A stretch of 63,481 nt of DNA, the filler included, from Guillardia theta CCMP2712 (Eukaryota; Protista; Cryptophyta): the NCBI RefSeq assembly GCF_000315625.1. It is 6 parts of 6 records of this genome, joined end to end, with 100 filler letters (N's around TTAATTAATTAA, not from the genome) between each part and the next. Parts side by side here need not be neighbours in the genome. Positions count along the whole stretch, not along the records: positions 1 to 28,922 come from NW_005434568.1; 5 more parts are not named here. One strand, written 5' to 3'. The position numbers and the translations under genes were made by a program. This document shows positions 3,952 to 24,673 of this stretch, piece by piece. Position 1 is the stretch's first letter. Every line of letters starts with the position of its first letter. The notes under the pieces are model-generated. The model saw only the letters and a list, made by a program, of their open reading frames with translations, was not told the DNA's origin and did no database searches.

Positions 3952-4319
3952 GTTCGAGAACTGACGATGCAGGCACCGCGACAGTACTTTTATGATAGCA
4001 TGGAGTTGTCAGAACCCTTGAGAAGAACTATCCAACTACACATGTCAACAAGAAAAAGGCGTCAAGGTGTCTTCTATGCTCACGCTCTTGCTGTAAAGTT
4101 TGCATCATCATCCTGCAGTCCAAGCAAAGGTAGCATCATGAATGCATTGACGTGATATCACCCATGACCCTTACAGCTTCATGATCACAATATAATGATT
4201 CTCACTCATCACATCATGGATGTCTGCAGATAAGTTCCCTTCCTATGTGAAGCATGGTCCTGCGCATCTTGCCCGGTGGTTCAACCATGCATCTCATTTG
4301 CAATGACACATGCCGTGCT

Positions 4320-5340
4320 CGATTAGGTCCTTCTCACATTCACCACCCTCCTGTATCTCCCTGTCACCACCCCCTCCCCGGCATTACTTCGAACCGTGAT
4401 CTACCCTACACCCCACCCTGGGCCTAGCCCCCACCCCTACGGTGATTTTTTGAGGCCCCAATCTCCAGGGTGGGTCCATCCACCACCCCTCCCTCCTCAT
4501 GTATAGACTTCTTTGATCCCACCACCCGGTCCTTACACATATCCCCTATCTCCCCTAGAAATTTCTATCTCCGAACCCACCCCCTGCAAACCTTTTTTCC
4601 CCGTCTTTACTACACTGCCTGAAGATCACGAAGGGCTTGAAGGAATGCCGCTACCCCCACCCCCACCCTCACCTCCACCCCCACCCCCTCCCATTTTCAC
4701 GACTGACCCCCCCTCGACTCCGAGGCTCATTTTGGGAATTTCCGAGCCTCACCCTCACCGCCCCTACCACTGTCAAGTACCCACGGGTCCTACTAGGCTG
4801 TATTCAGAAAGAGTTTTCGACCAACTGCAGGGCACTAGGCTACATATAGTACCCCCCCCCCCTAGGCCTCGAAGCAACCGTCTGCCAGGTGTCGTCCCGG
4901 TCACTACTAGCAGCAAAAAAAAGCAGCAGCTCACCACCCTACCCCATGAGGTCTCAGCCCTTCTTAGCACCGTCAAGTACGGAGTGTTCGGAGTGATGAC
5001 TCCCCTGCCCTGGCACGGGCCCGGCCAAGTTTCTGCCAGGCTGGTCAGTGACCCGGCTGTGGTCAGTGGAGTCAGAGTTTACTCTGAAAGTTGAATAAGT
5101 TACTTCAAGCCGGGCTCAAAGTTACTAAAAGTTAGGTTGAAAATCAATGTGTGACAACACTGTGACACTGTGATCGGACAGCCTGTCCGAACAAGTTTCC
5201 TGGTGAGTCCGAGTCACCGCGCGGCCCGGCCCCCGCGGCCGCCGGGGCACCCGGAGCCACGGCACTGTGGCAGGCCTGCCAGGCTTCGGCCCGTGCAGTG
5301 CGGCCCAGCGGCGGGGCCCGGGGTCCGGCGGGCCGCCATT
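4320..5340. repeat. Intergenic repetitive block: C-rich tracts followed by a CpG/palindrome-rich block
   Basis: Recurrent CCACCC/CTACCC/ACCCCC runs at 4320-4960, then dense CCGG/GGCC/CCCGGG at 5000-5340. Similar architecture recurs elsewhere in the window. Confidence 0.5.
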
Positions 5341-5826
5341 CAACGGTTCCAACGATACTTGGCAAGGTTAATCGATACTTACCGTACTACGGTACCGTGG
5401 CTTGAGTGGCGACATTGATAACAAGTGGCTCATCTTTCCGAGCGGCGGCCCTGCCAAATTACAGTATTTACGTTAGCCAGGGACCGTGACGTTCCGATCA
5501 CTTTAGTTGATCATCCGATGATCGGCTGCAACAAATCTTCCGACAAGGCTTCGGAAAGTTCCATTTTTAGTTAAATCACCCGGCCAAGATGGCATCATGT
5601 TTCGAGGCCTCCCAAAATTCAGTTGATACTGAAGTAATCCTAATAACGACAGACAAGCTCTCGTTCTGCGTTAGACCATGATCTTTGTGGGGTATGCCCA
5701 CCTCACAATACAGGCCCCTGAGATCCATGCGCAATCCTTTCAAGAGGATCAGCCTTGCTTCTGTGCAAATGAGCCTTCTGGCTACCGACGCCGGAGTTTG
5801 CAAGAGACCTGATATCATTGTGTCAG

Positions 5827-6886
5827 TCACGTGGAAGAGGGGCGCCATTGAGCTGACCTCGGGTTTGCTGTCGACCCGTACATGGAATGGTACTGCTTGT
5901 CGTAGTTGTCCCTCTTCCGCTCGCCATCTCTTGATGTTTCGTAGGCAGTTCGCGGAGCACTTGCACCTTAGCAAGAAATACGTGAGAAGGCGCAGGGAGG
6001 CAACAGGAGACGAAGATAAATCTTACTTGCGAGTCGACGCTCAAGCGCACTCATGTGCTCTTGTCCCTGCAGGATTGTGACTACTTTCGAGTGACGTGGG
6101 ACAACAGAATGCACTTACAGGTCGTTTGTGTCGCTTCCATTCTTCATCGTCAGAATGATCGCGTGTATCTCGCTTCCTCTTCTTGTCCTTTTTCTCGGCT
6201 TTCAGTCTTTTCTTCTCCTGCTTGTGGGCCTTTTTCAACTCTTTCTTCAGCTTCTTGTCACTTTTGCCCTTGTGATCGGTCGACGAGTTCCATTCACCTG
6301 CTTCAATGCTTGCCAGCAATGCAGCATGATCAGTGTCGTCATCCTTATGGCCGTGATTGCCGCCTGAGAGGTGATTCTGAAGGATCTCGTTGATATTTTG
6401 CGTTCCCTCCTGTCGTTCGTGGGTTTGCGTTTCAAGACTTGCTTGCAGGTTCTCCACTTTAATGGGAGCAAACCCAAGACCTTCAACTCTTTCGCCAAAG
6501 GATTCGCTGGCAATGCCATCTGCGATGGTACCAGCTTCTGCATTGCCTTTCTTGAACAGCTTGTTCTTCTCCGCTCTTTCCAGGGCCACTTCGGGTCTTT
6601 CCATAGGTTTTTCACCAAGGAGTTGCGCCATCAGGTCATTTTCTCGTGATTTCACCATGTCGATTTCCGTTTTCCCGGACTTCTTCAGATCTACCTTCGT
6701 TTCATTGACGTACCAGTTAAGATCCTTGAACTTTTGCCATCTTCCCGCTGCTGCCTTCACAGAGTGACCTAGATAGTTTTGAGCTTGAAAGACGGTGTCT
6801 CCATGTTTCTCCTTGATCTCGGACCAGTCAAATTGGTCCTTTCCTCCTCGAGTTCCTCCTCGAGCAGGACCATTGTAGATCGCCAT
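5827..6886 (-). CDS. MMTAG2: MMtag domain protein (multiple myeloma tumor-associated protein 2 homolog)
   Basis: RGGTRGGKDQFDW...NYLGHSVKAAAGRWQKFKDLNWY matches the MMtag motif, followed by a Lys-rich tail. Introns predicted near 6068-6118 and ~5968-6027; 3' end approximate. Confidence 0.88.
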
Positions 6887-7313
6887 GAGCGTATCCTTGT
6901 TCTAGGTACAGATTTATTCCCTACCACTCCTTCCGATCTAGCAACGAGCAGAACCACACGGTATCTGCATGAAAGCGATCAGCTGGAGAAGCTTACACTT
7001 CAAAACAAACAAGCATTTTTTTCTATTCAACCCATCCCCTTGCTCCCTTCTCAATCTCTCCCCTATTACCTCCCCCACTCATCCCAATCGCCACACCGCC
7101 GTTGGTTCCCACTACCTGGCTGCCACCCTGCCTCTTCCGCCCCACATTCCCTTTATCCTTTGCCCATGCGCCTCCATCTCTATTCCCCCCTTCAGTCGCG
7201 ATCCTTCACGCCCTCTATCCTTCTCCCGCTTCCTTCCTTCAGCTCCTCTCCTCTCCTTGTCCTCCCCGTGCATCAGCCGCCTGCTCCTGCTTCCCCAAAA
7301 CTTCCCTTTGGTT

Positions 7314-7479
7314 TCTTTGCTCAAAGTTAAGTTAAAATTCAGTACGAGATCATTTGACCATCATGAGTCAACTGAGAGTCGGAGAGCCTCCGGGCGGCCC
7401 TCGGAGACCCCGGCTGAGAGACTCGAGAGCCTCGGAGACCCAATCATGGGCCTGCCAACTGCTGTCCCCCAAACTTAAC
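7314..7479. mobile_element. Short non-autonomous interspersed element, copy 1
   Basis: Left end TCTTTGCTCAAAGTTAAGTTAAAATTCAGTACGAG and right end CCTGCCAACTGCTGTCCCCCAAACTTAAC are shared with the copy at 7666-7817; the middle differs. Confidence 0.6.
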
Positions 7480-7653
7480 TGATACCTTCACTTAACTGCG
7501 CGCAGGACCATTCCCCCGCGCCACTAGGCTTCAATCAGGGCCACTGCAATGGGGCCCGGCCGGTACGACTCCGATTGCCGGGCCCGGGGCCTTCCGGCGG
7601 GGCCCCTGAGCCTCCGACGCAGCGGGCCGGGCGACCGGCCGGCGGGGGGAAAC

Positions 7654-7829
7654 CGTTGAACAGTCTTTACTCAAAGTTAAGTTAAAGATCAGTACGAGGA
7701 CAATCAGGAGAGACGAGGAGGCTTGACCCAGACACTGTCGCACAGGCCAAACGGCGAGAAGAGAAAAGACAGCGAGAACCAAACCCAATCCTGCCGACTG
7801 CTGTCCCCCAAACTTAACGTTGAACAGTC
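7654..7829. mobile_element. Short non-autonomous interspersed element, copy 2, with flanking direct repeat
   Basis: CGTTGAACAGTC at 7654-7665 and 7818-7829 flanks a 152-bp body with the same terminal blocks as the other copies. Confidence 0.7.
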
Positions 7830-8375
7830 ACGGTTAGATTAGAATTTTCACTCAATTGTAAGCAAAATCTTTGGGTACCGTACATTGTAGGTAAAATCAA
7901 CCAACGGGCGGCGGCGGTACCGAGTAAAGAAAGAAAGTTTACCGTGGAGTACGCCCGGCGACAATGTCAACGGTTTTCAACGGTCACAAAGAAGGGGTAG
8001 TACCCCACCACCTTACCTAAAGTACCCCCATGTCCTACGACAAGAGTACTTTACAAATTTGACTGAATGATTTTGATATCATCAAGTGACGGTAGCAGTA
8101 GCGTAGCGGCACAATGCCGCCGGCCTCGCGAGCAGACGTGATGACGTGAGTGACTGAGCACTTAGACAGTGGATGAGACCAAGAGCAAGCACCCGTGATA
8201 GCATCGCTCAATGCTGGACTATCGTGAGAGACAAGCCTTCGCGCTTGTGAGCAAGAAGTACATTGAACGAGTATCTCAAAGCTGGATTTGAAGCAGTGCT
8301 CATTTTTGAAACAGCTCATTCATACTGCTACAGCACATCGAGATCTCTGTTGCCATTAGGACTCTTGTCTATCCC

Positions 8376-11300
8376 ATGATGCTTCCTAGTCCCAGGCTTC
8401 TTCTTGCAGCCGTAGTCTTCCTGCTCTCCTTTCCATCCCCGGCCCTTTCAGTGCAATGCGGTTCCTGCAACTTCATTGTCACCTCAGGCGTCCTGACAAG
8501 GGAGGGCGACTGTCCTACCGACTGCTTGAACCTCGGGCTGACGTACATGTCGATCTCCAGCATCGTGCCAGGAACGTTCAACAACCTGACCTCGCTGGTC
8601 GGAGTCTATCTTCAATCGAACCGCTTGCAAAACATCACGTCAGAGCAACTGGCGGGGCTGCAGGGGCTCAAGTACCTGGATCTGTCTTACAACCAGATAT
8701 CGTATGTGCCGGCAGGAGCTTTGTACAACTTAGGGGGACTTGTTGGTCTTAGCTTCCAAGGAAATATGCTGGTGAACATCTCTTCGGACATGTTCTCCGA
8801 GCAACACGTTCTGATGTATCTTGATCTTTCATACAATCGCATCTCGAACATTGCTTCAGGTGCCTTCAACAGTCTTTCGTCCCTCTATTCCCTCGCCTTG
8901 AACGGAAACAGCTTGTCAAGCATATCGTCAGACACGGTCAAAGGACTAGGGAGTATCTCATATCTGACCCTGGACTCCAACAAGATCACAAGCATAGCTT
9001 CTGGAACCTTCAGCAACCAAGTCTACCTTGCTAGCCTTAGTCTAAACGGGAACAACCTCACTAGCATCTCTTATGATACCTTCAAAGGACTATCGAGACT
9101 CAGTTCACTTTACCTTGGCAACAACAGGATCTCCAGCATTGCTCCTGGAACCTTCAGCAGCCTGACGTATCTGTACACCCTCGATCTGCACGGGAACAGC
9201 CTCACTAGCATCTCTTCTGACACTTTCCAAGGACTAGCAAGACTGACATATTTGAACACATCCTTCAATCAATTCTCAAACATTGCTCCCGGGGCCTTCA
9301 GTAACCTGACGTCTCTGAACTCCCTGGACATCTCCATGAACAACCTCTCGAACATCTCTCCCCTCACCTTCGCAGGGCTCTCATCACTACAGTACCTGTT
9401 TCAGTGGAGTTGCAAGGTTTCGTCTGTAGCTCCAGGCTCCTTCGCCGGCTCTCCACTCCTGAAGATAGTCGATCTGTCGTCGAACAGACTGACCACCATC
9501 GAGGCAGGCGTCTTCAACTCTCTCAGCAGCCTTTCCTCCCTCTCCTTGGGAAGCAACCAGATCAGCTGCGTGGCTCCTGGGGCCTTCAACCCCCAGCTGC
9601 AAGCAGGTCTTCGAGTCAACATGTGGTACAACCCTCTTCCTTGCTTGGAGCCCTCGGTCGTCCCGCTCGTGACGCCTCTGATCCCTCCATGCACCGCCGA
9701 CACGCGATGCTCGATGAACGCGACAGTCAAGGCCATCCAGCTGGTCGAGCTGCTCAAGGTCATGTACGAGGCTCTAGACGTGGCCGGAGCGGGTCAGGTG
9801 TGCGTGAGAGACATCGCGGGGGCGGCGGGGAACCTGAGCTCGTACTACCTCGCTACCTCGGGCAGGGTGGAGCTATCGCAAGACTGGGTGAGCGGCTTGT
9901 TACGGTCGTTCGTGGCTGAGGCGGGGGCGGAGGGGCAAGTGACGTCGAGGAGGCTCTTGCTGGGCATTGTGGGGGGGGTGACGCCGGAGTGGAGCCCGGA
10001 AGAGAGCGTGGGCGACCTGATGCTGCGAGTGTCAGCCGTGTTGATCAGCATGGCAGACTCAGACAAGGATGGCAGGGCGGGAGGGCGGGAGCTGGAGGGG
10101 ACGTTTGGGATCCAAGGCGGACTGCTGGATGTGGTAAGGAGAGCTTGAGGGGGAGGCAGAGGACTGACGAGGAGGGGGAGGTCAGGTGATGCAGGTAGCC
10201 GCCAAGAAGAACGGGCAGCCTGTCGGGCAGGTAGGAGCGTCAGAGCTGGCGTACCTGCTGGAGTCAGCGACGGCGTACATGCGGGGCGAGAAGCTGCCGC
10301 GGGACCTGGACGGGATGACGAGGGAGATGGTGCTTGTGCTGGTGAGGCTGGCGGATGCCAACGGAGACGAGGCGATCTCGATGCAGGAGGGGAGGATGAT
10401 CGGCATACCAGGTCCAGCTCTCGCCGAGGTGAGTGAGGTGGTGGGGTAGAGGAGGGGGTCGTGAGGCCGGTTGAGCAGGTGGACGGGGACGGGAACGGCG
10501 TGGTGACCGCCGAGGAGATGATGGACGCCAAGCGACGGATGCTCAACAGCCTGGCGACGTCGTCAGGCTACGTGCACGTGCGAGACAAGGCAGCGAAGAT
10601 CTACTTGACGTCTGTGTGGACGACAGGGAACCTGACGATGCTGCTGCAGCCGTCTTGGTTCTTCCCTAGGCGGGCGGTCGATGCCCCGGCGGTGGAGCAG
10701 TGCGGGTCAAGCGGCTCTGCGGCAGGAGGGTCGACAGGCTCTGGAGCGGAGACGTGGAGCTACGGGGACCTCGGGGAGGAGATGGTTGAGCTGATAGGGC
10801 CTGGCTGCTCGTTCGCAGACTTTGTGAGGTACGGGCTCGCGTTGGGACCCTACGCAGAGCAGCAGGCGACATGCAGCTCGATACTGCCATGGACGCTTGC
10901 TCCTCTGCTCGTGACCTCGCTCGATCGGAACCTCGACGGAGGGCTGTCGATGGACGAGACGATCTGCTTGGGGAGCGCGGTCTTCCTGGACATCTCCAAG
11001 GGGTCCTGGCGGATAGAGGGGCAGATGCTGGAGGCCTATCTGCTCCGCACGGGTCAGGTGGGAGGCCCGGTAAGCAACGGGAGCGACTTCGCCTTCTTCC
11101 GGATGCTGTTCGGGGAGCGACTGGACCCGTCCTTGAACAGCTCTGCCATCTTCCCGCACATCGTGCTGCCGGACCCGAGCAGCGCTGAGCTGAGCGCGAG
11201 CTTCTTGCTGGGGCTGGGGATGCCGGGAGGGCGATACCAGGAGCTGTTCTGCGGCTCGTTGCCATGCGTCGGGAACGAGAGCCTGTCGGGGCTCAACCTC

Positions 11301-12798
11301 ACGGCGCTGCAGAGGCTGCATGCTTCAGCGGTGTCGGCCTACTGCTCGGGCAGCTGGCTCATGCAGTACAGACGCTCAGCCGGGAGCTCGTCGTGCTTCG
11401 CAAGCTTGATCGACACGCGATGGGCCGTGACTAGCGTAGCGTGCGCGTACCAGGCTGTCAACCCAGCGGACGGGAGCGTGACGGTGAGGATGACACGGGC
11501 GGACGGGTATCGGATCGAGGACGTGGTGAGGGTGTCTAGCCATCCTGGCTACGGATCTGATCCGGGGAGGTATGACGTGGCGCTGTGCGAGCTCGGGGCT
11601 GCGTCGCTAGGGAGGCCTGTGGAGCTCTACGACGGGACGATGGTGCAGGCGATGGAGTGCAGGAGCATGGAGCTCGTCGTGGGCAGCCCGTTGAGCATGA
11701 TGCCGGTCCTGTGCGATCCGAGCCCGGGCATCCTGCAGGACCTGAGGCTGTCAGACCCGTCGCGGCCCTCGTGTCCGGCTCCATGCAACCCGCCCGTCGC
11801 GATGCCCAAGATGGCGGCAGGGACAGCGATGGTGGTGCGAGACGGGAGGAGCCCGGGGAGGGAGTGGCTGTACGGGTACGTGTCGGAGTCGAGCAGCGGA
11901 GGGCAGACGTGGATGGGGGTGAGGGAGGTGCTGGAGTGGATCTTGAGCGGGGACGGGGTGGGGAGACACGGGGCGAAGGTGATGCGGGTGAGGGTGACGT
12001 CGCTGGTGCTTCCGGCGGGAGGGTCGCTGAGAGTGTCGGCGGGTCACCGGGGGGCGATGGAGGTGGTGGAGGAGCCCTGCAGGGAGGAAGTAGTCTACAC
12101 GGACGGGGGGACGGGGTCGATGAGGCTGGAGCTGCTGAGCTCGTGCGGGCTGTGTGGGAAGGTGGAGGTGAAGGTGAGAGGGGAGGAGGAGGGAGGGGCT
12201 GTAGGGCTGACCGGGTGGGAGGTGCAGGCGGAGGTGGAGGTGCTGTCTTGCAGGGAAGCTCAGCGCAGCACGGGCGTGTGTCCTGAGGGATGCGCGCAAG
12301 GATACAACAGGACAGGGACGGGGGCTGTGTGCGAGGTAGAGCTGCTGCTGGGAGGGGAGAGAGGCTGACTCGTCCTGTCAGGATCCTCAATGCAATGTAA
12401 TCATGCCGGCTAGTCGTGCTATAGAGCTCATCAAGCAGAACAAGGCGAGACGAGGTGAGAGGTCGGCAGGAGGCGACGGCAGTGGGTGACGGATGGAGCA
12501 GGCGGGGTGAGGGCGAGGGATCCGCGGTATCACTCGTGGGTGTGTCTCAAGGACTGGGACGAGGAGGAGATGCTGTCTTGCGGGATCGACCGCAACGAGT
12601 GGGCGTGCTTCAGGTGGGCAAGGGAGAGGGAGGGCGGGAAGGAGGGAGGGGGAGGAGAGGGGAGGAGGCAGAGGGATGGAGGGGCAGCAGGGGGAAGGGG
12701 CTGACAGAGAGTTGGGGCATGGCAGGTACCTGAAGGAGAGCATGGAGCTGGAGTTTTACGGGCTGAACAGTCGGGTTCGTCTAGTACAGGAGGGATGA
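8376..12798 (+). CDS. Secreted LRR / EF-hand / inactive trypsin-like / CUB-like protein, copy A (15 LRR units)
   Basis: Signal peptide, Cys cap, 24-aa LRRs, NPLPC cap, EF-like loops (DANGDEAISMQE, DGDGNGVVTAEE, DRNLDGGLSMDE) and trypsin-fold motifs. Predicted exons 8376-10133, 10186-10428, 10479-12335 (probable extra intron 12174-12227), 12382-12454, 12502-12613 and 12727-12798. Confidence 0.85.
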
Positions 12799-13231
12799 GG
12801 GCAGTAGGAGGGGCAGTCCCCTCATGGTTGCTGGCGGAGGAGGAGGATTGATACATCTATTTAACATCCTACTATTTCAAGTGACGCGTCAAAACTGTTG
12901 CAATGATACAACCTCGTACACAAGTTTCTCGCAAGGGAGTAACTGCTGAATGGCACATGGCACCTAGGTGGACCAGACGATCATGTCCTGACATGCAACA
13001 TCTTTCAAGAACAACCTTGTGCAGCACCAATGATGGGTCTGTGAAATTTCTCAACATTCATCCTCGCGATCGAGGACAGGGAAGAAAGAAATGCTGCTGT
13101 CTTCACTCCAACGCCCATGAATCTGTACCAGTGTTCCCTAAGCTGCGAAGCAAGCAATCGATTACACTCTGAGACAAGAGCCTTGCATCAGGTCTTGTTC
13201 TCTTGGAAGTGAATGCCCTTGACCTGATTCT

Positions 13232-14650
13232 CTATTTACATGGGAACAACAACACTTTGTTTGAATACTGATCCTTCAAGCAAACAGTCTCGGCAACCAT
13301 TGACCCCCAGCTGTATTTGTGCAGTTTGTCCTTTGCTGGGGCTCCTGTCTCAGTCAGTCTAGGGCATTCACTCTTGACATGTCCCACTTTCTTGCAATAA
13401 AAGCACTTTGTTTTCTTCTTGTCAAACTTGTTCGCTCGAGACCCTGCAGCGGTCAAGGACCGCACCTTCGTGGGAGGTGACTTCACTAGAAACACCTTCA
13501 AGTCTGTTTCATCAGCTTGCGTCTCGTCTTCGTCCAAGTACTCCGCCCAAGTATACAAGTCTGAAAGGTGTTTGCCGAACGCCTCCATCGAACAGTACTC
13601 ATCCACCGTACCTTCACGTTCCAGCGCAGCCCTCAACCTCTCCTTCATACACACTCGCACAGCTTGACGATAGATCCCAGCAACGAAGATTTTCTCCAAG
13701 AAACCTGCAATGACTATCTGCTTGCATAGAAGCTTGTAGCAACCGATGATGTGATGTGCATATCTCTTGTACCTCGTGATATACGACGACATGTTCTCCC
13801 CTGAGCTCTGTCTGATCTCCTTCAGTTCCTCCACCAGCCTCTCAACCTTGCTTTCCGGCAACCAGTGCTTTGCCATGAGCTCTTTGAAGCTCTTCCAGTC
13901 CCCACCCCCGGGCAAGCACATGCTCTTGTCCCTGTCCGGTAACGACTCGTACCAGTCGCGCGTATCCCCTTCCAAGAGCGTCGAGGCTACAGCACACCAG
14001 GTGTGGCCGGGGACGTCTTGACAGCGGCACTGCAGCTCTACCTCGCACAACCATGTCACGACCGACCTGCACACGCTGAAGTCTCCGTTGAATCGACGCG
14101 CATGCTCGGAATGGAACTGACCACCTCTCCTCGGTGCCACCATCCTCCCTTCTGCATTGAGCTCAGTTTCCTTCAGGTGCTTCGCGTCTCGCGCTGGCTG
14201 TGATGTGCCAATGTCTGTCCTCTGCGAACGCAGTGAAGCCATCTCCTCCTGAAGCTCCTCCTGCACACGCTTCATCTTCGCAATCTCTCCACGCCATGCA
14301 TCCGTCGAACGATGTAACCCTTCTTGCCGCTCCTGCAACTCCCGGCAAGTAGCTCGAAGAAGCATGTTCTCCTCCTCTAGTTGACCATAGCTTCTCTGTG
14401 AGTGTGACGCCTGTTGCTCTTCATCTGTTCTCAGTAGGCCGGCTTTTCTATCCCATGTAAACCCATCCAGTGATGGGAGAGAATCGTCTGATGCAGATTC
14501 GGGCCCACAAGATCCCAGCGCATCGATCTTACATGGAAGCGAATCGATCCCAGCCTCGTCGTGTCGTTCCTTCATGGTTGATCGTTGAGGAGAGCCGATC
14601 GCAGTCGTCTCTGTCATCTCCTTCACCATCTGATTCTCGCAACCTAGCAT
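13232..14650 (-). mobile_element. gag: Stand-alone LTR-retrotransposon (Ty3/gypsy-like) Gag ORF
   Basis: N-terminal coiled coil, capsid region (FNGD...WL...LLEGDTRDWYESL...WKSFKELMAKHW), MHR-like LKEIRQSSGENMSSYITRY and zinc knuckle CFYCKKVGHVKSEC (CX2CX4HX4C). No protease, RT, integrase or LTRs seen in the spacer. Confidence 0.88.
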
Positions 14651-14867
14651 GCACGTGAAGTTGAAAACCTTTACTGACAGTTGAATTATTGACGATTCTT
14701 GAACTTATACTTTATGCACATTCGAAGGACGTGAGTCTTCCTGCTGTCCTGCCCTCCGACCGAAGAGACTCAGTGGATCCGATCGGATCGGCACGGCGGC
14801 CGGGACTCACCGAGACCTGAGCACTCAGCCCTATCATGCACATCCAGGCTACTCCCTCCTACTGCCC

Positions 14868-17800
14868 TCATCCCTCCTGTACTAGACGAACCCGACTGTT
14901 CAGCCCGTAAAACTCCAGCTCCATGCTCTCCTTCAGGTACCTGCCATGCCCCAACTCTCTGTCAGCCCCTTCCCCCTGCTGCCCCTCCATCCCTCTGCCT
15001 CCTCCCCTCCCTCCTCCGCGTCGCCCTCCCCCTCCCTTGCCCACCTGAAGCACGCCCACTCGTTGCGGTCGATCCCGCAAGACAGCATCTCCTCCTCGTC
15101 CCAGTCCTTGAGACACACCCACGAGTGATACCGCGGATCCCTCGCCCTCACCCCGCCTGCTCCATCCGTCACCCACTGCCGTCGCCTCCTGCCGACCTCT
15201 CACCTCGTCTCGCCTTGTTCTGCTTGATGAGCTCTATAGCACGACTAGCCGGCATGATTACATTGCATTGAGGATCCTGACAGGACGAGTCAGCCTCTCT
15301 CCCCTCCCAGCAGCAGCTCTACCTCGCACACAGCCCCCGTCCCTGTCCTGTTGTATCCTTGCGCGCATCCCTCAGGACACACGCCCGTGCTGCGCTGAGC
15401 TTCCCTGCAAGACAGCACCTCCACCTCCGCCTGCACCTCCCACCCGGTCAGCCCTACAGCCCCTCCCTCCTCCTCCCCTCTCACCTTCACCTCCACCTTC
15501 CCACACAGCCCGCACGAGCTCAGCAGCTCCAGCCTCATCGACCCCGTCCCCCCGTCCGTGTAGACTACTTCCTCCCTGCAGGGCTCCTCCACCACCTCCA
15601 TCGCCCCCCGGTGACCCGCCGACACTCTCAGCGACCCTCCCGCCGGAAGCACCAGCGACGTCACCCTCACCCGCATCACCTTCGCCCCGTGTCTCCCCAC
15701 CCCGTCCCCGCTCAAGATCCACTCCAGCACCTCCCTCACCCCCATCCACGTCTGCCCTCCGCTGCTCGACTCCGACACGTACCCGTACAGCCACTCCCTC
15801 CCCGGGCTCCTCCCGTCTCGCACCACCATCGCTGTCCCTGCCGCCATCTTGGGCATCGCGACGGGCGGGTTGCATGGAGCCGGACACGAGGGCCGCGACG
15901 GGTCTGACAGCCTCAGGTCCTGCAGGATGCCCGGGCTCGGATCGCACAGGACCGGCATCATGCTCAGCGGGCTGCCCACGACGAGCTCCATGCTCCTGCA
16001 CTCCATCGCCTGCACCATCGTCCCGTCGTAGAGCTCCACAGGCCTCCCTAGCGACGCAGCCCCGAGCTCGCACAGCGCCACGTCATACCTCCCCGGATCA
16101 GACCCGTAGCCAGGATGGCTAGACACCCTCACCACGTCCTCGATCCGATACCCGTCCGCCCGTGTCATCCTCACCGTCACGCTCCCGTCCGCTGGGTTGA
16201 CAGCCTGGTACGCGCACGCTACGCTAGTCACGGCCCATCGCGTGTCGATCAAGCTTGCGAAGCACGACGAGCTCCCGGCTGAGCGTCTGTACTGCATGAG
16301 CCAGCTGCCCGAGCAGTAGGCCGACACCGCTGAAGCATGCAGCCTCTGCAGCGCCGTGAGGTTGAGCCCCGACAGGCTCTCGTTCCCGACGCATGGCAAC
16401 GAGCCGCAGAACAGCTCCTGGTATCGCCCTCCCGGCATCCCCAGCCCCAGCAAGAAGCTCGCGCTCAGCTCAGCGCTGCTCGGGTCCGGCAGCACGATGT
16501 GCGGGAAGACGGCAGAGCTGTTCAAGGACGGGTCCAGTCGCTCCCCGAACAGCATCCGGAAGAAGGCGAAGTCGCTCCCGTTGCTTACCGGGCCTCCCAC
16601 CTGACCCGTGCGGAGCAGATAGGCCTCCAGCATCTGCCCCTCTATCCGCCAGGACCCCTTGGAGATGTCCAGGAAGACCGCGCTCCCCAAGCAGATCGTC
16701 TCGTCCATCGACAGCCCTCCGTCGAGGTTCCGATCGAGCGAGGTGACGAGCAGAGGAGCAAGCGTCCATGGCAGTATCGAGCTGCATGTCGCCTGCTGCT
16801 CTGCGTAGGGTCCCAACGCGAGCCCGTACCTCACAAAGTCTGCGAACGAGCAGCCAGGCCCTATCAGCTCAACCATCTCCTCCCCGAGGTCCCCGTAGCT
16901 CCACGTCTCCGCTCCAGAGCCTGTCGACCCTCCTGCCGCAGAGCCGCTTGACCCGCACTGCTCCACCGCCGGGGCATCGACCGCCCGCCTAGGGAAGAAC
17001 CAAGACGGCTGCAGCAGCATCGTCAGGTTCCCTGTCGTCCACACAGACGTCAAGTAGATCTTCGCTGCCTTGTCTCGCACGTGCACGTAGCCTGACGACG
17101 TCGCCAGGCTGTTGAGCATCCGTCGCTTGGCGTCCATCATCTCCTCGGCGGTCACCACGCCGTTCCCGTCCCCGTCCACCTGCTCAACCGGCCTCACGAC
17201 CCCCTCCTCTACCCCACCACCTCACTCACCTCGGCGAGAGCTGGACCTGGTATGCCGATCATCCTCCCCTCCTGCATCGAGATCGCCTCGTCTCCGTTGG
17301 CATCCGCCAGCCTCACCAGCACAAGCACCATCTCCCTCGTCATCCCGTCCAGGTCCCGCGGCAGCTTCTCGCCCCGCATGTACGCCGTCGCTGACTCCAG
17401 CAGGTACGCCAGCTCTGACGCTCCTACCTGCCCGACAGGCTGCCCGTTCTTCTTGGCGGCTACCTGCATCACCTGCCCTCCCCCTCCTCGTCAGTCCTCT
17501 GCCTCCCCCTCAAGCTCTCCTTACCACATCCAGCAGTTCGCCTTGGATCCCAAACGTCCCCTCCAGCTCCAGCCCTCCCGCCCCGCCATCCTTGTCTGAG
17601 TCTGCCATGCTGATCAACACGGCTGACACTCGCAGCATCAGGTCGCCCACGCTCTCTTCCGGGCTCCACTCCGGCGTCACCCCCCCCACAATGCCCAGCA
17701 AGAGCCTCCTCGACGTCACTTGCCCCTCCGCCCCCGCCTCAGCCACGAACGACCGTAACAAGCCGCTCACCCAGTCTTGCGATAGCTCCACCCTGCCCGA

Positions 17801-19642
17801 GGTAGCGAGGTAGTAGGAGCTCAGGTTCCCCGCTGCCCCCGCGATGTCTCTCACGCACACCTGACCCGCTCCGGCCACGTCTAGAGCCTCGTACATGACC
17901 TTGAGCAGCTCGACCAGCTGGATGGCCTTGACTGTCGTGTTCATCGAGCATGGCGTGTTTGCAGTGCATGGAGGGATCAGAGGCGTCACGAGCGGGACGA
18001 CCGAGGGCTCCAAGCAAGGAAGAGGGTTGTACCACATGTTGACTCGAAGACCTGCTTGCAGCTGGGGGTTGAAGGCCCCAGGAGCCACGCAGCTGATCTG
18101 GTTGCTTGCCAACGAGAGGGAGGAAAGGCTGCTGAGAGAGTTGAAGACGCCTGCCTCGATGGTGGTCAGTCTGTTCGATGACAGATCGACTATCTTCAGG
18201 AGTGGAGAGCCGGCGAAGGAGCCTGGAGCTACAGACGAAACATTGCAACTCCACTGAAACAGGTACTGTAGTGATGAGAGCCCTGCGAAGGTGAGGGGAG
18301 AGATGCTCGAGAGGTTGTTCATGGAGATATCTAGATCCAAAAGTAGTGTTAGACTACTGAAGGCCCCGGGAGCAATGTTTGAGATGTTGCTTGAGGCAAA
18401 ATACAGGCTTCCCAGATTCTTCAGTCCATAAAATGCATCTACTGTGATGGTGGAAATGTTGTTGCCATGGATGTCAAGACCACGCAGTAATGTCAGGCTG
18501 CTGAAGGTTCCTGGAGGTATGCCGGAGATCTGGTTGTAGCCAACACTCAGATATTGGAGGTTCCCGACTCCGGCAAAGGTATCAGGAGAGATGCTAGTGA
18601 GGCTGTTCCCATCCAGATAGAGGGTGTACAGATACGTCAGGCTGCTGAAGGTTCCAGGAGCAATGCTGGAGATCCTGTTGTTGCCAAGGTAAAGTAAACC
18701 GAGTCTTCCTAGTCCTTTGAAGGTGTCTGACGAGATGCTTGAGATTCTGTTCCCCCATAGATCGAGTTCGTAGAGTGACGACAGGTTGTTGAAGGTCCCC
18801 GGAGGTATGCTGGAGATCTGGTTGTAGCCAAGATAAAGCGTTCCTAATTGTCCAAGCCCTTTGAAGGTGTCTGACGAGATGCTTGAGATGCTGTTCCCCC
18901 ATAGATCGAGGGTTTTCAGGTACGTCAGGTTGCTGAAAGCCCCGGGAGCTATGTTCACAATTTTGCTGTTCCACAGAAGAAGGGTTTGGAGTGAAATTGG
19001 CCCAGAAGAAAACTCAACAGTGATATTAGGCAAGTTGTTCCCATGCAGGTAGAGACTGTTTAGGCTTGTCATGTCTTTGAAAGACCCAGAAGCTATTTTG
19101 GAGATGCGATTGTATGAAAGATCAAGGTACATCAGGTTCTGCAGTCCCACATACATATCCGAAGAGATGTTCACCAGCATGTTGCTACGGATGTACAGAT
19201 TAACAAGTGAGCTTAACTTGCTGAAAGCTCCTGCCGGCACATACGATATCTGGTTGTAAGACAGATCCAGGTACTTGAGCCCCTGCAGCCCCGCCAGTTG
19301 CTCTGACGTGATGTTTTGCAAGCGGTTCGATTGAAGATAGACTCCGACGAGCGAGGTCAGGTTGTTGAACGTCCCTGGCACGATGCTGGAGATGCTGTTG
19401 TACCCCAGGTAGAGGTACTGCAAGCTCGAGAGCCCAGTGAATGCGTTGACAGATATCGAGGTGATTGACATGTACGTCAGCCCGAGGTTCAAGCAGTCGG
19501 TAGGACAGTCGCCCTCCCTTGTCAGGACGCCTGAGGTGACGATGAAGTTGCAGGACCCGCATTGCACTGAAAGGGCCGGGGATGGAAAGGAGAGCAGGAA
19601 GGCTACGGCTGCAAGAAGAAGCCTGGGGCCAGGAAGCATCAT
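14868..19642 (-). CDS. Secreted LRR / EF-hand / inactive trypsin-like / CUB-like protein, copy B (20 LRR units)
   Basis: Inverted paralog of copy A with the same exon structure. Start taken at ATGATG 19642; the first-exon ORF is 120 aa (5 x 24) longer than in copy A. Confidence 0.85.
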
Positions 19643-20159
19643 CAGTTTGAACGGCGGAATATCTTTGACAGATATCGCAACGCTGGAGGGACCTAGATCA
19701 GGAACACGGTGAGTGAACATTATTTACACGTATCAAGGCAAGCTTCTCTTGGCTTCTGCGATGTTGCACTTATACCATCTCATGGGTTCTGCTCCCACTG
19801 CGTTTATCAAAATCCTACTCACAACCTTCAGCTCCGACCAATGGTGACAGCCGAAGTCAGTCTTGCGTGCTCTTCCTGCTACCTTATCTCCATCACATCA
19901 ACTTGGCTTTTCTCATTCTTCTTCAGCTCTCCTTCTCTCTCTGCCCTCAACTGGCGTCCTTTGTTCATACCGCCATGACTAGGTTTTGCCCAATTCCGGC
20001 GGGAACCTGAGGGGAATGTCCTTAGGGGCAACCTACCGGTGGTTTACCGCGAGATAGGGGGGGTTACGTGCGAGTGATCACTCTATGGAATTGTACGCCG
20101 GTACTTTTCACGCTCTGAGCCAGTAAACTGACCACCCCTACCCCCTTCTGGTATTTAAT

Positions 20160-20700
20160 AACCGATGTGAGGTATGGGTACGGATATGGAAACGGGCACG
20201 CGTACGGGTACGAATCACCGAATTCCGTACGGTACACTGGCCCGGGGTACGGCGCAGGCTACCGTGGCCCGGTACGCCGCCCGCCGTACGGGGTACCGTA
20301 CGACGGTACGGTGAAGATCATGACCGTAATGGGCCGCCGGCAGCCGCGGAGCCGCCGTGTGGCCTGAGAGCCTCCGCCCGGCCCGGCCGGTCACCGGGTC
20401 GGGCCGCTGACCGTACCGCCTGTGATCCCCGGCGGCGCTCGGTGCCACGACGGTGGACGGTCCTCAGGTCGAGCCTGGAGGCCCCTGAGGCGGCAAGTTT
20501 CAGTTTGCACTGACTGCGGCTGACGCACTGAGATCGCCGTCGGACTCTCGGAGCAGTTCCGAGCCCAGTGAGCCTGTCGGAGGCTCACGGACTCCGACCG
20601 GCGGACCGGGGCCGCCGGGAGTGGCGGGCCCGGCCGTCACTGTGTGACTCGGACGGTTGCACTAGGAGTGAGCAGTCCGATCACAAGTTCACTGAGTTGA
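20160..20700. repeat. CpG/palindrome-rich intergenic block
   Basis: Dense GTAC, CGTACG, GGTACC, CCGG and GGCC words; only low-complexity ORFs. Confidence 0.5.
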
Positions 20701-21405
20701 CTCGGCGGTCAGACTGAAGAATGCTTGCGGTGAGGCTCTGACTTCTACTTCAAGGCTTTGGCTCGGTGGCCGAGCAGAGTCAAGGGTTCTGCCATTGAGC
20801 TTTCATTGCAGAGCATCAACCGTTGTCATCAACCTGCCTCATGCGGCTATCCTGGATGAATCTCCACATATCCTCAGTTTGATTGAATGAGTCATTATCG
20901 TACCTCTGTCTTCGTTGTTTTACAATTTCCGTTTTGAATACTATGATCTCAGTGACAGATGAACTGTGAGTTCACATTGCTCGAAGTGTTCGGTAAGATC
21001 GGCTATCAGTATGCAAACAATTCAGTCTGAGCATGGCCCGCCTCTTTGTGGAGGCGGCGGCGGGAGGCAAGGTGAGGCTTGTCATCACGTGTATTGAGAT
21101 GGATACCTGAGAACAGCCCGGCCCCTCCTGGACATGATCTCAGGTGACTAGGTGGTAGATGCTTCTTCGTTTACTTCTGCGTTCTATCGCATTCACCGCC
21201 ATCAATTACATGTACACCTCGTAACAAACTCATCCGCACCAGACACGTTTCGCTGTACACAAGTCACGTTGACTCTCGTGGGCAACAACCATCAAGTCCC
21301 ATCCTTCTCAAGCACTCCATGCCTTTGACTCGTTTGCTTCTCTCGTTGCCTCCTTTCCTTCCCGCCTCCATTGTTTCCGCGTCCTTCCCCTCCTTCACGG
21401 AACTA

Positions 21406-21933
21406 TCAGAGATGGAGCTTGTCTCCCGTTGCTCCGTAGACGGTAGGAGGGTCGTCTTGAGACAGGAGGTCAATACAGTAGGCAAGAGCCTTCAGCTGCC
21501 TCTCTCTGAATGCCCCGAGGCTCATCGCGGGTGGATCAGCCCAGTCAACATGGTCCGACTTGTTCGTTGAGCGAGGTGAACTGTTTGTCGACAACAGATC
21601 CATGCGGCTTGAAAGGACGTCCATGTCAGCCTCAAAGGCCCAATGTTCGCCCCCGTCGTTGTGAAGGCTGAGTTCGCGGAAGGAGGGTTGATGCTGCCAT
21701 GCCTCGAGCGCAGCAGCAGAGCAGGGGGGAGAGTGCGATGAGTCTGCGAGGAGTGAGGGAGGGAGAGAGGACATACTTGAGTCCCCGGAAGGACTTGAAA
21801 TCGCAGAGGACTTGACCATGGCGTCTGCCTTGGAACAGTACAGGACTCCGTAGGAAGCAGGGGAACAGGACGAAGAGGTTAACTCGCCCACTGGAGGCGG
21901 CGACGCAGTTTTGACGGGTCGCATCAACTTCAC
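21406..21933 (-). CDS. Hypothetical protein (Ser-rich N-terminus)
   Basis: 175-aa ORF with a non-repetitive C-terminal half; no family recognised and the start is uncertain. Confidence 0.3.
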   Translation of the reverse strand: MKLMRPVKTASPPPVGELTSSSCSPASYGVLYCSKADAMVKSSAISSPSGDSSMSSLPPSLLADSSHSPPCSAAALEAWQHQPSFRELSLHNDGGEHWAFEADMDVLSSRMDLLSTNSSPRSTNKSDHVDWADPPAMSLGAFRERQLKALAYCIDLLSQDDPPTVYGATGDKLHL

Positions 21934-22163
21934 TGAGTTCAGTTCTTACTACGACTGCCAACTCGAACAAGTCATTTTACACGGCCGCCCGGCGGATCCA
22001 GGCTTGTACCTGAATGTTTACTCATCTTGCGGGAACCCAATTTGCTACACCAGTGGCGCCGGGATACCACTGGCACGTGCCGCCTGAAACCGCCGGGCCG
22101 GGCCGGGGCAGTGACAACGGTGAAAGTACCGGCGGGCCCGATGGCAACTTTGAGTTAAAAATC

Positions 22164-22308
22164 TTTACTCAAAGTTAACTTAAAGATCAGTACGAGGATC
22201 GGACAACCAGGAGAGTCGAGGAGGCCCTTGACCCTCGAGAAACTATGATGAACCAAGTTTGTCAAACTCAGATTGGCCGTACTGGTTTTTAACTTAACTT
22301 TGAGTAAA
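22164..22308. mobile_element. MITE-like arrangement of the same element family (31-bp inverted ends)
   Basis: 22164-22194 and 22278-22308 are reverse complements at 28/31 positions. The left part matches 7665-7729. Confidence 0.65.
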
Positions 22309-23047
22309 AGCCGGCCACCGTGCGGCCCTTCGGAAGGCTAACGGGGCGTGATACCGTATGATAACGTAGTATGATTGAAAAAGCCGCTAGGAAGTTGAGA
22401 CGATCATCGGATGCCTGGATCACAGAACCCGGCTACGCCGTCAGAGCTTGAGACAACAAGAGGACTGCTCCTCTTTTTCTCAGTGGCACTGAGACGGTCG
22501 GCGGAGGCGGCCACAGCGGCCAGGGGGTAAAGTACGGTAAGGTACTCCGGCGTAATCGAGCCCCAGACCCCGGTCACCGGGTGACAGACCGGCGGCGGGC
22601 CGCTGGGGCTGGGACTCTCGGTCCGATGGTCAACCGTTCAGGCTACGCCGTGACGGTCCGATCACCGGGTTCGGAACCCGGCCCGGCGCGGGGGCCGGCC
22701 GCCGCCGCACAAATGCAGGCCCGCCTCAGTTCTGAGGGCCGGGCCGCCGGGGCTGCGACCCTCCACGTCGAGGGGCGATCATGGTCGGCAGGTGAGGAGA
22801 GAGCGAGGACGGGCTCGGAACGTGATGGCAAGATGGTGAGATGTTGATGATCGGACTGAGGTGAAGATATCAGATTCTTGAATGAAGAGCTGAGACGATG
22901 GAGTGATGGAGTGATGGGTTCAAGAGGGATGTTTGCTCGACCTTTTGGGACTTCTCTTCCATGGTGAACTTTACATGCACTGGACATGTTGGAGCTGGTT
23001 CTGGCCGACGCTTAACCTCCTCCAGCAAAGTCACAGGGGTAGATAGA

Positions 23048-24327: not shown

Positions 24328-24673
24328 GCACACTTACAAGGCAGCGGGCAGCAAGGGTCGCTGCTTCACAGTCAAAGATTCAAGCAGCGAAGCCTCACGC
24401 GTTTTTCAGATTCGTTTGAACGTGAAAGCATGCAAAGAAACACATCATGACCCCTTCTCGCGTCTCCGAAACAATCGTTGTCAAAGGGAAAGCAAGGCAA
24501 GAGGAGGCAGAGGTGGGACAGTGTTGGAGCAGGCACCGCGATTGTTTCTGGGTTGGACATCCCTGCTGGCAGCGGCTCGGTAGGGAGAGTCACTTGAGTT
24601 CGAGGTCGACCAAGGGAAAGAGCAGCACGTGTTGATCGCTACTAGAAGCAACAAAGAAGTTCAAACGGCTAAG

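What the first reader, a model, noticed from the sequence alone, without database searches (positions are those of the whole stretch)
8376..19642. Palindromic pair of secreted LRR receptor-like genes with constant ends and a variable LRR cassette array (VLR-like logic)
Seen: two convergent copies share a near-identical signal peptide, Cys cap and first LRRs, and a near-identical 3' region (9330-12812 vs 14854-18328; one residue difference across the 635-aa ORF). The middle differs strongly: 8721-9329 (609 nt) vs 18329-19225 (897 nt), a difference of exactly 4 x 72 nt, giving 15 vs 20 LRR units overall with frame preserved. Established: constant-variable-constant LRR architecture is how agnathan VLRs diversify, and LRR module shuffling is described for brown algal ROCO genes. 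Inference: this is a diversifying recognition receptor locus in a unicellular alga, with constant parts homogenised between palindrome arms.
Basis: partly seen in the sequence, partly recalled or inferred. Interest (0 to 1): 0.92.

Follow-up and report, generated by a model that had tools for sequence, protein, structure and literature searches.

The report
Inverted pair of algal LRR genes
Two mirror-image, tail-to-tail copies of a cryptophyte-alga gene for a secreted leucine-rich-repeat protein are almost identical except in the middle of the repeat array; this is a familiar way for such genes to vary, and nothing here points to a lamprey-like antibody system.

Summary
Arms 8376-12812 (+) and 19642-14854 (-) form an inverted repeat around a unique 2041-nt spacer that carries a retrotransposon gag ORF. 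Each arm is one complete six-exon gene (models of 1371 and 1491 aa). The domain order is signal peptide, a 4-Cys N-cap, 15 or 20 exact 24-residue LRRs in a single exon, a C-cap, four EF-hand loops, a trypsin-like domain lacking His57, and a Cys-rich tail. There is no transmembrane segment. The nearest relatives are cryptophyte proteins (Guillardia, Rhodomonas, Hemiselmis, Hanusia).

Homology begins exactly at the start codon and ends 14 nt after the modelled stop, and the flanks are unrelated. That rules out an allele mis-join and favours long-term arm-to-arm gene conversion. Exons 2-6 have pS 0.005 and introns 2-4 are identical.

The array core differs by 72- and 144-nt unit gains or losses. 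Its synonymous divergence is old (dS 0.6-1.1), and it contains 76- and 125-nt islands of perfect identity. dN/dS is below 1 in every site class, both genes are intact, and there are no donor cassettes in the 28.9 kb.

The "VLR-like" reading is therefore unsupported. The closer analogy is plant Cf/Ve-type LRR paralogues combined with a mini-palindrome.

The parts
8376..12812 (+). Arm A = gene A. Modelled exons 8376-10133, 10186-10428, 10479-12335, 12382-12454, 12502-12613, 12726-12798; product 1371 aa.
   Evidence: repeat; GT-AG model, intact CDS; 3' exons match the conserved C-terminal motif of cryptophyte relatives.
14854..19642 (-). Arm B = gene B. Modelled exons 19642-17525, 17472-17230, 17179-15323, 15276-15204, 15156-15045, 14940-14868; product 1491 aa.
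   Evidence: same splice sites as A and no internal stops. ORF.
12813..14853 (.). Unique spacer between the arms (2041 nt).
   Evidence: no other copy in the window and no LTRs; no arm-to-arm similarity beyond the boundaries.
13232..14650 (-). Intact 472-aa retrotransposon gag + zinc-knuckle ORF inside the spacer; no pol.
   Evidence: PF03732 E 8.7e-11, PF00098 E 4.9e-4.
8376..8525 (+). Signal peptide and 4-Cys N-terminal cap (CGSC...C..DC), shared with Hanusia phi and Cryptomonas LRR proteins.
   Evidence: AF2 gives a beta-hairpin cap with pLDDT 84-95. dS vs B is 0.08.
8526..9605 (+). LRR array of gene A: 15 units of 72 nt in one exon.
   Evidence: LRR_8 E 3e-81; solenoid, pLDDT 82.9.
18053..19492 (-). 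LRR array of gene B: 20 units of 72 nt in one exon.
   Evidence: (LRR_8 E 4e-136).
8723..9323 (+). Divergent array core of A (about 8.3 units); the counterpart in B is 18335-19223 (about 12.3 units).
   Evidence: unit identities 54-76%, apart from the A8/B11 island (97%); dS 0.6-1.1.
18335..19223 (-). Divergent array core of B.
8598..8722 (+). 125-nt tract identical to B 19348-19224 (units A1-A2 = B2-B3).
9107..9182 (+). 76-nt perfect-identity island (A8 = B11, B 18695-18620) inside the divergent core; candidate short conversion tract.
19394..19465 (-). Extra 72-nt unit in B relative to A near the 5' end. A unit 0 is an in-register hybrid of B units 0 and 1; the position is ambiguous by 3 nt.
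18588..18953 (-). 144-nt (two-unit) tandem super-repeat, 2.5 copies; source of B's extra unit pairs.
   Evidence: TRF, 77% matches; B8/B10 83%, B9/B11/B13 72-75%.
10056..10091 (+). EF-hand loop 1 (DSDKDGRAGGRE). Further loops at 10354-10389, 10482-10517 and 10923-10958.
   Evidence: 12-residue loop pattern. Relatives P0001 and P0002 carry Pfam EF-hand hits. In this gene Pfam is sub-threshold.
11343..11930 (+). Trypsin-like (S1) domain lacking the catalytic His; codon 11439-11441 is Ala where trypsin has His57. Asp102 is kept.
   Evidence: PF00089, 24.7 bits, cut-off 20.6; alignment to beta-trypsin; family alignment.
12502..12798 (+). Last two exons, encoding the conserved Cys-rich C-terminal motif (W.C..DW.EEE..C......CF...G.N...LV), followed by the stop.
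   Evidence: local alignments to seven cryptophyte relatives.

Best explanation
This is a nuclear locus of a cryptophyte alga close to Hanusia/Guillardia. It holds two tail-to-tail paralogous genes. Each encodes a secreted modular protein: signal peptide, a cryptophyte-type Cys cap, a 'typical'-class LRR solenoid (15 or 20 units), a C-cap, about four EF-hand Ca2+ loops, a non-catalytic trypsin-like domain, and a Cys-rich tail. The inverted duplication is old. Intrachromosomal arm-to-arm gene conversion keeps the 5' 350 nt and everything from the last four LRRs to the stop codon nearly identical, introns included. The core of the LRR array escapes homogenisation and differs in three ways: (i) in-register unequal recombination or slippage has added or removed units in steps of 72 and 144 nt; (ii) anciently diverged units are retained; (iii) occasional short conversion patches occur. 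Once unit number and sequence differ, heterology itself hinders conversion through the core, so selection for diversity is possible but not required. The outcome is two proteins with different LRR binding surfaces on one shared downstream module. Shown: the anatomy, the domains, the divergence pattern and the boundaries. Inferred: conversion as the homogenising process, the age of the duplication, and the extracellular binding function.
For: Repeat geometry. Both genes are intact with conserved GT-AG sites, and the 3' exons are validated by homology. Homology is confined to the start codon through stop +14 nt, with random-like flanks. Introns 2-4 are 100% identical and exons 2-6 have pS 0.005, against dS 0.08 at the N-terminus, 0.03 after the LRRs and 0.6-1.1 in core units. 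A single recent duplication cannot produce that heterogeneity. Perfect 125- and 76-nt islands lie in the mosaic. There is a two-unit 144-nt tandem period, and unit counts differ by 1+2+2. Domains. No TM. Cryptophyte kinship.
Against: Only one genome window was available, with no outgroup, population or read data, so conversion is inferred and not observed. Higher GC3 in the homogenised parts (0.82 vs 0.63, p 3e-4) would fit GC-biased conversion, but it is confounded with domain. The G. theta homologue, which lies on a 9.9-kb scaffold where no second copy or LRR was found, has GC3 0.77, and within LRR units alone the difference is not significant (p 0.13). Import of core units from unseen paralogues cannot be excluded. 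The gene model has no RNA support. The LRR-to-EF/S1 junction rests on frame-preserving 52- and 50-nt introns, not on homology.
Confidence: 0.6

Rival explanations
1. The inverted duplication of the gene is recent. The array core of one or both copies was later overwritten by ectopic gene conversion or recombination from other, diverged family members elsewhere in the genome (germline cassette exchange, as at plant R-gene clusters).
For: Core units have dS 0.6-1.1 while the rest has 0.005-0.08. The structure is a mosaic with perfect islands. A wider cryptophyte family with the same caps exists.
Against: Both duplication breakpoints would have to coincide by chance with the start codon (0 nt) and the stop codon (+14 nt). 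No donor units lie in the 28.9 kb. No close paralogue appeared in 15 billion proteins or in JGI metagenomes, although the source genome itself is not in those collections.
Confidence: 0.2
2. This is a germline diversifying recognition locus. Positive or balancing selection on ligand-contacting LRR residues maintains the difference between the arms while the signalling or effector part is homogenised.
For: Architecture is constant-variable-constant. The LRR ectodomain resembles animal receptor ectodomains (LGR4/5, LRIG1, TLR3, Toll5A). A Hanusia homologue of the ectodomain is a type-I membrane protein. In pairs A3/B4 and A10/B15 the changes cluster at LxxLxLxx x positions.
Against: dN/dS is 0.6 at exposed positions, 0.75 on the convex side and 0.17-0.26 elsewhere, and never exceeds 1. 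Unit A4/B5 keeps its exposed residues identical despite dS 1.1. With only two sequences and saturated dS the test is weak in both directions. No TM or signalling domain is present.
Confidence: 0.15
3. Assembly artefact: two alleles or a fold-back chimera were mis-joined into a false palindrome.
For: Near-identical inverted arms are a known artefact class, and no read data were available here.
Against: Upstream flanks (1-8375 vs 19643-28922) share no inverted similarity and carry different genes. The arms differ by 5 LRR units and by old sequence. The spacer is unique and holds an intact ORF. Alleles would share their flanks, and fold-back chimeras have identical arms and no spacer.
Confidence: 0.03
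4. VLR-like somatic assembly: the LRR array is rebuilt in individual cells from donor cassettes.
For: Only the formal constant-variable-constant layout supports this.
Against: The germline genes are complete and in frame. There is no non-coding intervening sequence and there are no flanking cassettes. All units lie in one exon.
Confidence: 0.02

Closest known systems
Tomato Cf-2/Cf-5 and Cf-4/Cf-9 (Hcr) LRR receptor-like protein paralogues
   Same: These are extracellular LRR proteins whose paralogues differ by whole-unit LRR number and by substitutions in one block of the array, while the rest is near-identical. Cf-2 has 37 LRRs and Cf-5 has 31, a difference of six LRRs plus 78 substitutions (PMC4030839). 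Sequence exchange between linked copies generates the variants (Parniske 1997, as cited in PMC4030839).
   Different: The plant genes use the plant-specific LRR consensus, have a TM anchor and short tail, and are arranged in tandem. Here the LRRs are of the 'typical' 24-residue class, there is no TM, the C-terminus is an EF-hand plus pseudo-protease module, and the arrangement is an inverted pair.
Tomato Ve1/Ve2 locus
   Same: Two closely linked, inversely oriented eLRR genes (PMC3914901).
   Different: The Ve genes are TM receptor-like proteins, and no CDS-bounded palindrome with identical introns is described for them.
Primate X/Y-chromosome palindromes with arm-to-arm gene conversion
   Same: Inverted arms flank a unique spacer, arm identity exceeds 99% including non-coding DNA, and identity is maintained by intrachromosomal conversion (PMC3723533, PMC8981503).
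   Different: Those arms are many kilobases to megabases long and homogenised throughout. Here the arms are 4.4 and 4.8 kb, equal one CDS exactly, and contain an unhomogenised core. The GC-bias signature is ambiguous.
Agnathan variable lymphocyte receptors (VLR)
   Same: An LRR solenoid with N- and C-caps, and a constant 5'/3' with variable middle layout.
   Different: The VLR germline gene is incomplete and is completed somatically from hundreds of flanking cassettes. Here there are two complete genes and no cassettes. VLR structures are not preferentially matched; the top PDB hits are LGR4/5, LRIG1, LINGO-1 and TLR3.
Ectocarpus LRR-ROCO / NB-ARC-TPR candidate receptors (PMC3341825, PMC11378527)
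   Same: Algal LRR genes with variable repeat arrays, proposed as recognition molecules.
   Different: In Ectocarpus each repeat is its own exon and varies by exon shuffling, and the proteins are cytosolic ROCO GTPases. Here all LRRs lie in one exon, the proteins are secreted, and there is no ROC-COR domain.
Cryptophyte EF-hand + S1-homologue proteins (Guillardia theta XP_005818078, Rhodomonas, Hemiselmis) and cryptophyte capped LRR proteins (Hanusia phi, Cryptomonas transcripts)
   Same: The 3' two thirds align to the G. theta protein over 533 residues (E 3e-24), including the EF loop, the His-less S1 domain and the C-terminal motif. The LRR caps match the Hanusia and Cryptomonas proteins.
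   Different: None of those relatives combines the two modules. The G. theta locus has no LRR, and the Hanusia LRR protein ends in a TM helix.

Membership tests
Agnathan VLR system | Germline gene is incomplete: 5' and 3' coding parts are separated by non-coding intervening sequence | tested here: not met
   Both genes read through 15 and 20 LRRs in one uninterrupted exon.
Agnathan VLR system | Arrays of partial LRR donor cassettes flank the gene | tested here: not met
   tblastn of the LRR protein against the whole window finds only the two genes. The rest of the genome was not available.
Agnathan VLR system | Somatic, cytidine-deaminase-associated assembly giving clonal diversity | not testable with these tools
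   This needs single-cell or long-amplicon data and the whole genome.
Plant LRR receptor-like proteins (Cf/Ve type) | Signal peptide plus extracellular LRR array, with paralogues varying in unit number | tested here: met
Plant LRR receptor-like proteins (Cf/Ve type) | C-terminal transmembrane helix and short cytoplasmic tail | tested here: not met
   The best 19-residue hydropathy outside the signal peptide is 1.33, against 3.44 for the Hanusia homologue's TM.
Plant LRR receptor-like proteins (Cf/Ve type) | Plant-specific LRR consensus (LxxLxxLxLxxNxLxGxIP) | tested here: not met
   Units read LxxLxLxxNxIxxIxxGxFxxLxx, the 'typical' class; best Pfam hit is LRR_8.
Palindrome maintained by arm-to-arm gene conversion | Inverted arms around a unique spacer | tested here: met
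Palindrome maintained by arm-to-arm gene conversion | Arm identity above 99% that includes non-coding DNA | tested here: met
   This holds for 10183-12812: 4 substitutions in 2444 nt and introns 2-4 identical. It does not hold for the LRR core.
Palindrome maintained by arm-to-arm gene conversion | Direct evidence of conversion events (phylogeny across species or strains, polarised paralogous variants, GC bias) | tested here: inconclusive
   Indirect evidence only: CDS-bounded homology, heterogeneous dS, perfect islands. The GC3 contrast is confounded. No outgroup was found.
Brown-algal LRR-ROCO exon-shuffling receptors | One LRR per exon, plus a ROC-COR GTPase | tested here: not met
   The array is a single exon and Pfam gives no Roc/COR hit.
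S1 (trypsin-like) peptidase family | Sequence match to the trypsin fold above the curated threshold | tested here: met
   PF00089 scores 24.7 bits against a 20.6 cut-off, covering only the N-terminal barrel. PDB trypsins match at E 0.008. The AF2 model was too poor to confirm the whole fold.
S1 (trypsin-like) peptidase family | Catalytic triad His57-Asp102-Ser195 | tested here: not met
   TSVAC replaces TAAHC, so His is Ala. Asp102 is kept, and no GDSGG motif can be aligned. Most cryptophyte relatives also lack the His. The domain is therefore a non-catalytic homologue.
EF-hand Ca2+-binding modules | 12-residue loop D-x-[DNS]-x-[DNS]-G-x-[ILV]-x-x-x-E in a helix-loop-helix | tested here: inconclusive
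   Four loops fit the pattern and relatives score Pfam EF-hand hits. In this protein Pfam is sub-threshold (E 0.14), and the AF2 model of this part has low confidence.
Cryptophyte capped LRR ectodomain family (Hanusia phi, Cryptomonas) | N-cap CGSCxFxVxxGVLxRxGxCxxDC and C-cap N.ISCVA..AF...NP.PC...C...C around typical LRRs | tested here: met
   35% identity over the ectodomain, E 2e-41, with both caps aligned.

The most novel reading that the evidence does not exclude
The mini-palindrome is a built-in two-copy exchange device of a cryptophyte recognition system. A shared EF-hand/pseudo-protease effector module is kept identical by conversion. The LRR cores are reshuffled between arms, and with other family members, by short conversion patches and unit slippage. 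Strains, or even clonal lineages, would then carry different arrays under pathogen- or virus-driven selection. That would be an independently evolved, germline or semi-programmed LRR diversification system in a unicellular alga.
Probability: 0.1. Interest if true: 0.75.

Novelty: new variant of a known kind. Interest (0 to 1): 0.38.

Why it matters
If the locus is real, three points follow. First, the processes known from plant R-gene clusters (unit-number change plus patchy sequence exchange in LRR arrays) and from sex-chromosome palindromes (arm-to-arm homogenisation) act together on a single gene-sized palindrome in a cryptophyte, a lineage with almost no described recognition or adhesion molecules. 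Second, it defines an undescribed protein architecture, a capped LRR ectodomain fused to EF-hands and a His-less trypsin-like domain, together with a cryptophyte-specific LRR cap. Third, it gives a concrete locus at which concerted evolution versus diversification can be tested across strains. It does not provide evidence for adaptive-immunity-like receptor assembly in algae.

Tried and rejected
- The word-indexed protein search with the 635-aa ORF gave nothing. That is uninformative, because full-length kin exceed the length window. The exhaustive representative search then gave only 19 weak hits, the best being G. theta at 31%.
- The same tool with exon 1 returned only generic LRR proteins at 25-37% identity, plus the two cryptophyte capped proteins.
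- Two JGI metagenome scans, one with the 3' module and one with exon 1, found no relatives.
- An exact look-up of the gag product found nothing on record, so the source genome is not in the collections.
- The AF2 model of the 3' module with a 12-row alignment had mean pLDDT 42.9. It was too poor for a fold search, so none was run on it.
- The GC-biased-conversion test (GC3 against arm identity) was significant overall but confounded by domain and by the G. theta homologue's GC3 of 0.77, so I do not use it as evidence.
- Homology between the post-LRR region or exon 2 and G. theta P0001 was not significant. The junction between the LRR and EF/S1 modules therefore rests on the splice model only.
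- A bacterial promoter/terminator scan of the spacer is irrelevant for a eukaryote.
- Literature searches for cryptophyte LRR families or LRR palindromes found nothing specific.
- Allele mis-join was considered and rejected because the flanks are unrelated.
- The sequence is not human and not a toxin or virus of animals or crops.


Full report
**Observation.** The window holds a large inverted repeat. Arm A (8376-12812, + strand) pairs with arm B (19642-14854, - strand) across a 2041-nt unique spacer.
- From 9324 to 12812 the arms differ at 33 positions, 8 of them indel positions in a G-rich intron. Between 10183 and 12626 there are only 4 substitutions in 2444 nt.
- The two 635-aa ORFs differ at one residue.
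- The 5' 180 nt are 96.7% identical. After a 72-nt indel, A 8553-8722 differs from B at 2 of 170 positions.
- The LRRs are exact 24-residue units, 15 in A and 20 in B.

**Source organism.**
- The neighbouring ion-channel ORF (2065-3951, -) is 78% identical to a Hanusia phi protein. It is 94.6% identical at the DNA level over 2.7 kb to an ENA metagenome contig.
- The closest relatives of the gene's 3' part come from Guillardia theta, Rhodomonas and Hemiselmis.
- The window is a nuclear contig of a cryptophyte alga near Hanusia/Guillardia. Its own proteins are not in the searched collections.
- It is not human.

**Gene anatomy.**
- GT-AG introns of 46-112 nt that preserve the frame join six exons in both arms. 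All splice sites are conserved and there are no internal stops.
- The small 3' exons are confirmed by homology. They encode the C-terminal motif (W.C..DW.EEE..C......CF...G.N...LV) present in seven cryptophyte relatives.
- The products are modelled at 1371 aa (A) and 1491 aa (B).
- Exon 1 encodes a signal peptide, a 4-Cys cap, the whole LRR array and a C-cap. An AF2 model of this part is a confident solenoid (pLDDT 82.9, pTM 0.82). Its nearest solved folds are LGR4/5, LRIG1, LINGO-1, TLR3 and Toll5A ectodomains.
- Both caps are shared with a Hanusia phi and a Cryptomonas protein, which defines a cryptophyte LRR ectodomain family. The Hanusia member ends in a strong TM helix. The proteins here have no hydrophobic segment outside the signal peptide.
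- Downstream lie four EF-hand-like loops and a trypsin-like domain (PF00089, above the curated cut-off). In that domain His57 is replaced by Ala and Asp102 is kept. Most cryptophyte relatives have also lost the His, so this is a family of non-catalytic protease homologues.
- The G. theta homologue aligns over 533 residues (E 3e-24), but it has no LRR and none lies in its locus. The LRR fusion is therefore specific to this lineage or paralogue.
- The LRR-EF/S1 junction rests on the splice model. Homology does not cover it.

**How the arms differ.**
- A unit-by-unit matrix shows a mosaic:

| A unit(s) | B unit(s) | nt identity |
|---|---|---|
| A1 | B2 | 100% |
| A2 | B3 | 89% |
| A3 | B4 | 65% |
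| A4 | B5 | 74% |
| A8 | B11 | 97% |
| A9 | B12 | 76% |
| A11 | B16 | 88% |
| A12-14 | B17-19 | 97-99% |

- A unit 0 is an in-register hybrid of B units 0 and 1.
- The five-unit difference splits as 1 + 2 + 2. This fits a two-unit (144-nt) super-repeat that TRF detects in B.
- Exact-match tracts of 125 nt and 76 nt sit next to, or inside, sequence that is only 65-76% identical.
- Synonymous divergence is very uneven:

| Segment | Synonymous divergence |
|---|---|
| Exons 2-6 | pS 0.005 |
| Post-LRR part of exon 1 | dS 0.03 |
| N-terminus | dS 0.08 |
| Units A1/B2 and A8/B11 | 0 |
| Units A3/B4, A4/B5, A9/B12, A10/B15 | dS 0.6-1.1 |

- dN/dS in the divergent units is 0.17-0.37. Split by structural class, it is about 0.6 at exposed beta-strand x positions, about 0.75 at convex x positions and 0.17-0.26 at framework positions.
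- The variable core is therefore old or foreign sequence under overall purifying selection. It is not a young copy driven apart by positive selection. With two sequences and saturated dS, the test has little power to exclude selection at a few sites.

**Boundaries.**
- Similarity begins at the A of the shared ATGATG start (8376/19642) and ends 14 nt after the modelled TGA (12812/14854).
- The 300 nt beyond each boundary align no better than shuffled sequence. The two outer flanks carry unrelated genes.
- This rules out mis-joined alleles and fold-back chimeras.
- Introns inside the arms are identical while DNA immediately outside is unrelated. That is what long-term concerted evolution predicts, because conversion can persist only where selection preserves homology. 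A recent duplication would need both breakpoints to fall on the CDS ends by chance.

**Mechanism.**
- I conclude the following at about 0.6 confidence. This is an old tail-to-tail duplicate pair whose ends are homogenised by arm-to-arm gene conversion, as in primate sex-chromosome palindromes (PMC3723533, PMC8981503).
- The array core changes by unit gain and loss and by short exchange patches, as in plant Cf-type LRR paralogues. Cf-2 and Cf-5 differ by six LRRs (PMC4030839), and Ve1/Ve2 are inversely oriented (PMC3914901).
- Heterology in the core may by itself block homogenisation, so selection for diversity is possible but not required.
- A GC3 excess in the homogenised parts (0.82 vs 0.63) would fit GC-biased conversion, but it is confounded and I do not rely on it.

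- The VLR comparison fails on the defining features that could be tested. Both genes are complete and there are no cassettes in 28.9 kb.
- The brown-algal ROCO mechanism has one LRR per exon (PMC3341825). It does not apply, because the array here is a single exon.
- 'Receptor' is not shown, because the protein is predicted to be secreted.
- The homogenisation claim is supported.

**Limits.** No reads, transcripts, outgroup locus, other paralogues or strains were available. The 3' module could not be modelled reliably.

**Verdict.** This is a real and tidy example of known LRR-gene dynamics in an unusual organism, with an undescribed domain combination. It is a new variant of a known kind, of moderate interest.

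Noticed in passing
window 13232-14650 (-), within spacer 12813-14853: An intact 472-aa retrotransposon gag + CCHC zinc-knuckle ORF sits exactly between the palindrome arms. It has no pol, no LTRs and no second copy in the window, so it may be a solo or domesticated gag or a remnant.
   Followed up: partly
window 1684-4409; L001 137-2862: The ion-transport channel gene region is 94.6% identical at the DNA level to ENA metagenome contig ERZ930071 k127_160798, and the protein is 78% identical to Hanusia phi. A very close relative of the source alga is therefore present in an environmental data set.
   Followed up: partly
window 8376/19642 and 12812/14854: The arm homology coincides with the coding sequence almost exactly: it begins at the first base of the start codon and ends 14 nt after the modelled stop. 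The introns inside are identical and the flanks outside are unrelated.
   Followed up: yes
window 8526-9605 vs 9606-12798: Composition shifts sharply within one gene. The LRR array is about 50% GC (GC3 0.64-0.66) and the rest is 64-66% GC (GC3 0.81-0.85). Neighbouring genes have GC3 0.50-0.65. The cause is unresolved: GC-biased conversion, codon usage, or a separate origin of the LRR module.
   Followed up: partly
window 10134-10185, 10429-10478, 12336-12381, 12455-12501, 12614-12725: The introns of the pair are very short (46-112 nt) and 43-62% G. CTGAC-like branch motifs can be read in introns 1, 3 and 5. The last intron holds a 22-nt G-rich tandem repeat with the only indels between the arms.
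   Followed up: no
window 7664-7729 and 22162-22234: A roughly 70-nt dispersed direct repeat (86% identity) lies upstream of each gene of the pair, 0.65 kb from A and 2.5 kb from B. It may be a small mobile-element fragment or a shared regulatory element.
   Followed up: partly
window 9390-9461 (unit A12) and the B17 equivalent: One LRR unit (QYLFQWSC.V...) lacks the conserved Asn of LxxLxLxxN. It is the only low-confidence stretch of the predicted solenoid (residues 338-359) and is conserved in both copies.
   Followed up: no
window 13-963 (-), 6041-6886 (-), 25258-25686 (-): The flanking genes are ordinary. There is a heavy-metal-associated (HMA) domain protein cut by the window edge, an MMtag-domain protein, and a WD40-like fragment. 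Several other ORFs of 100 aa or more have no Pfam match.
   Followed up: no
P0001, P0004, P0006, P0011, P0012 (cryptophyte relatives): Most cryptophyte EF-hand + S1 proteins have lost the catalytic His (TSASC, TTSSC, TTARC), while the Rhodomonas members keep TAAHC. This is a lineage-wide family of secreted protease homologues that appears undescribed.
   Followed up: partly
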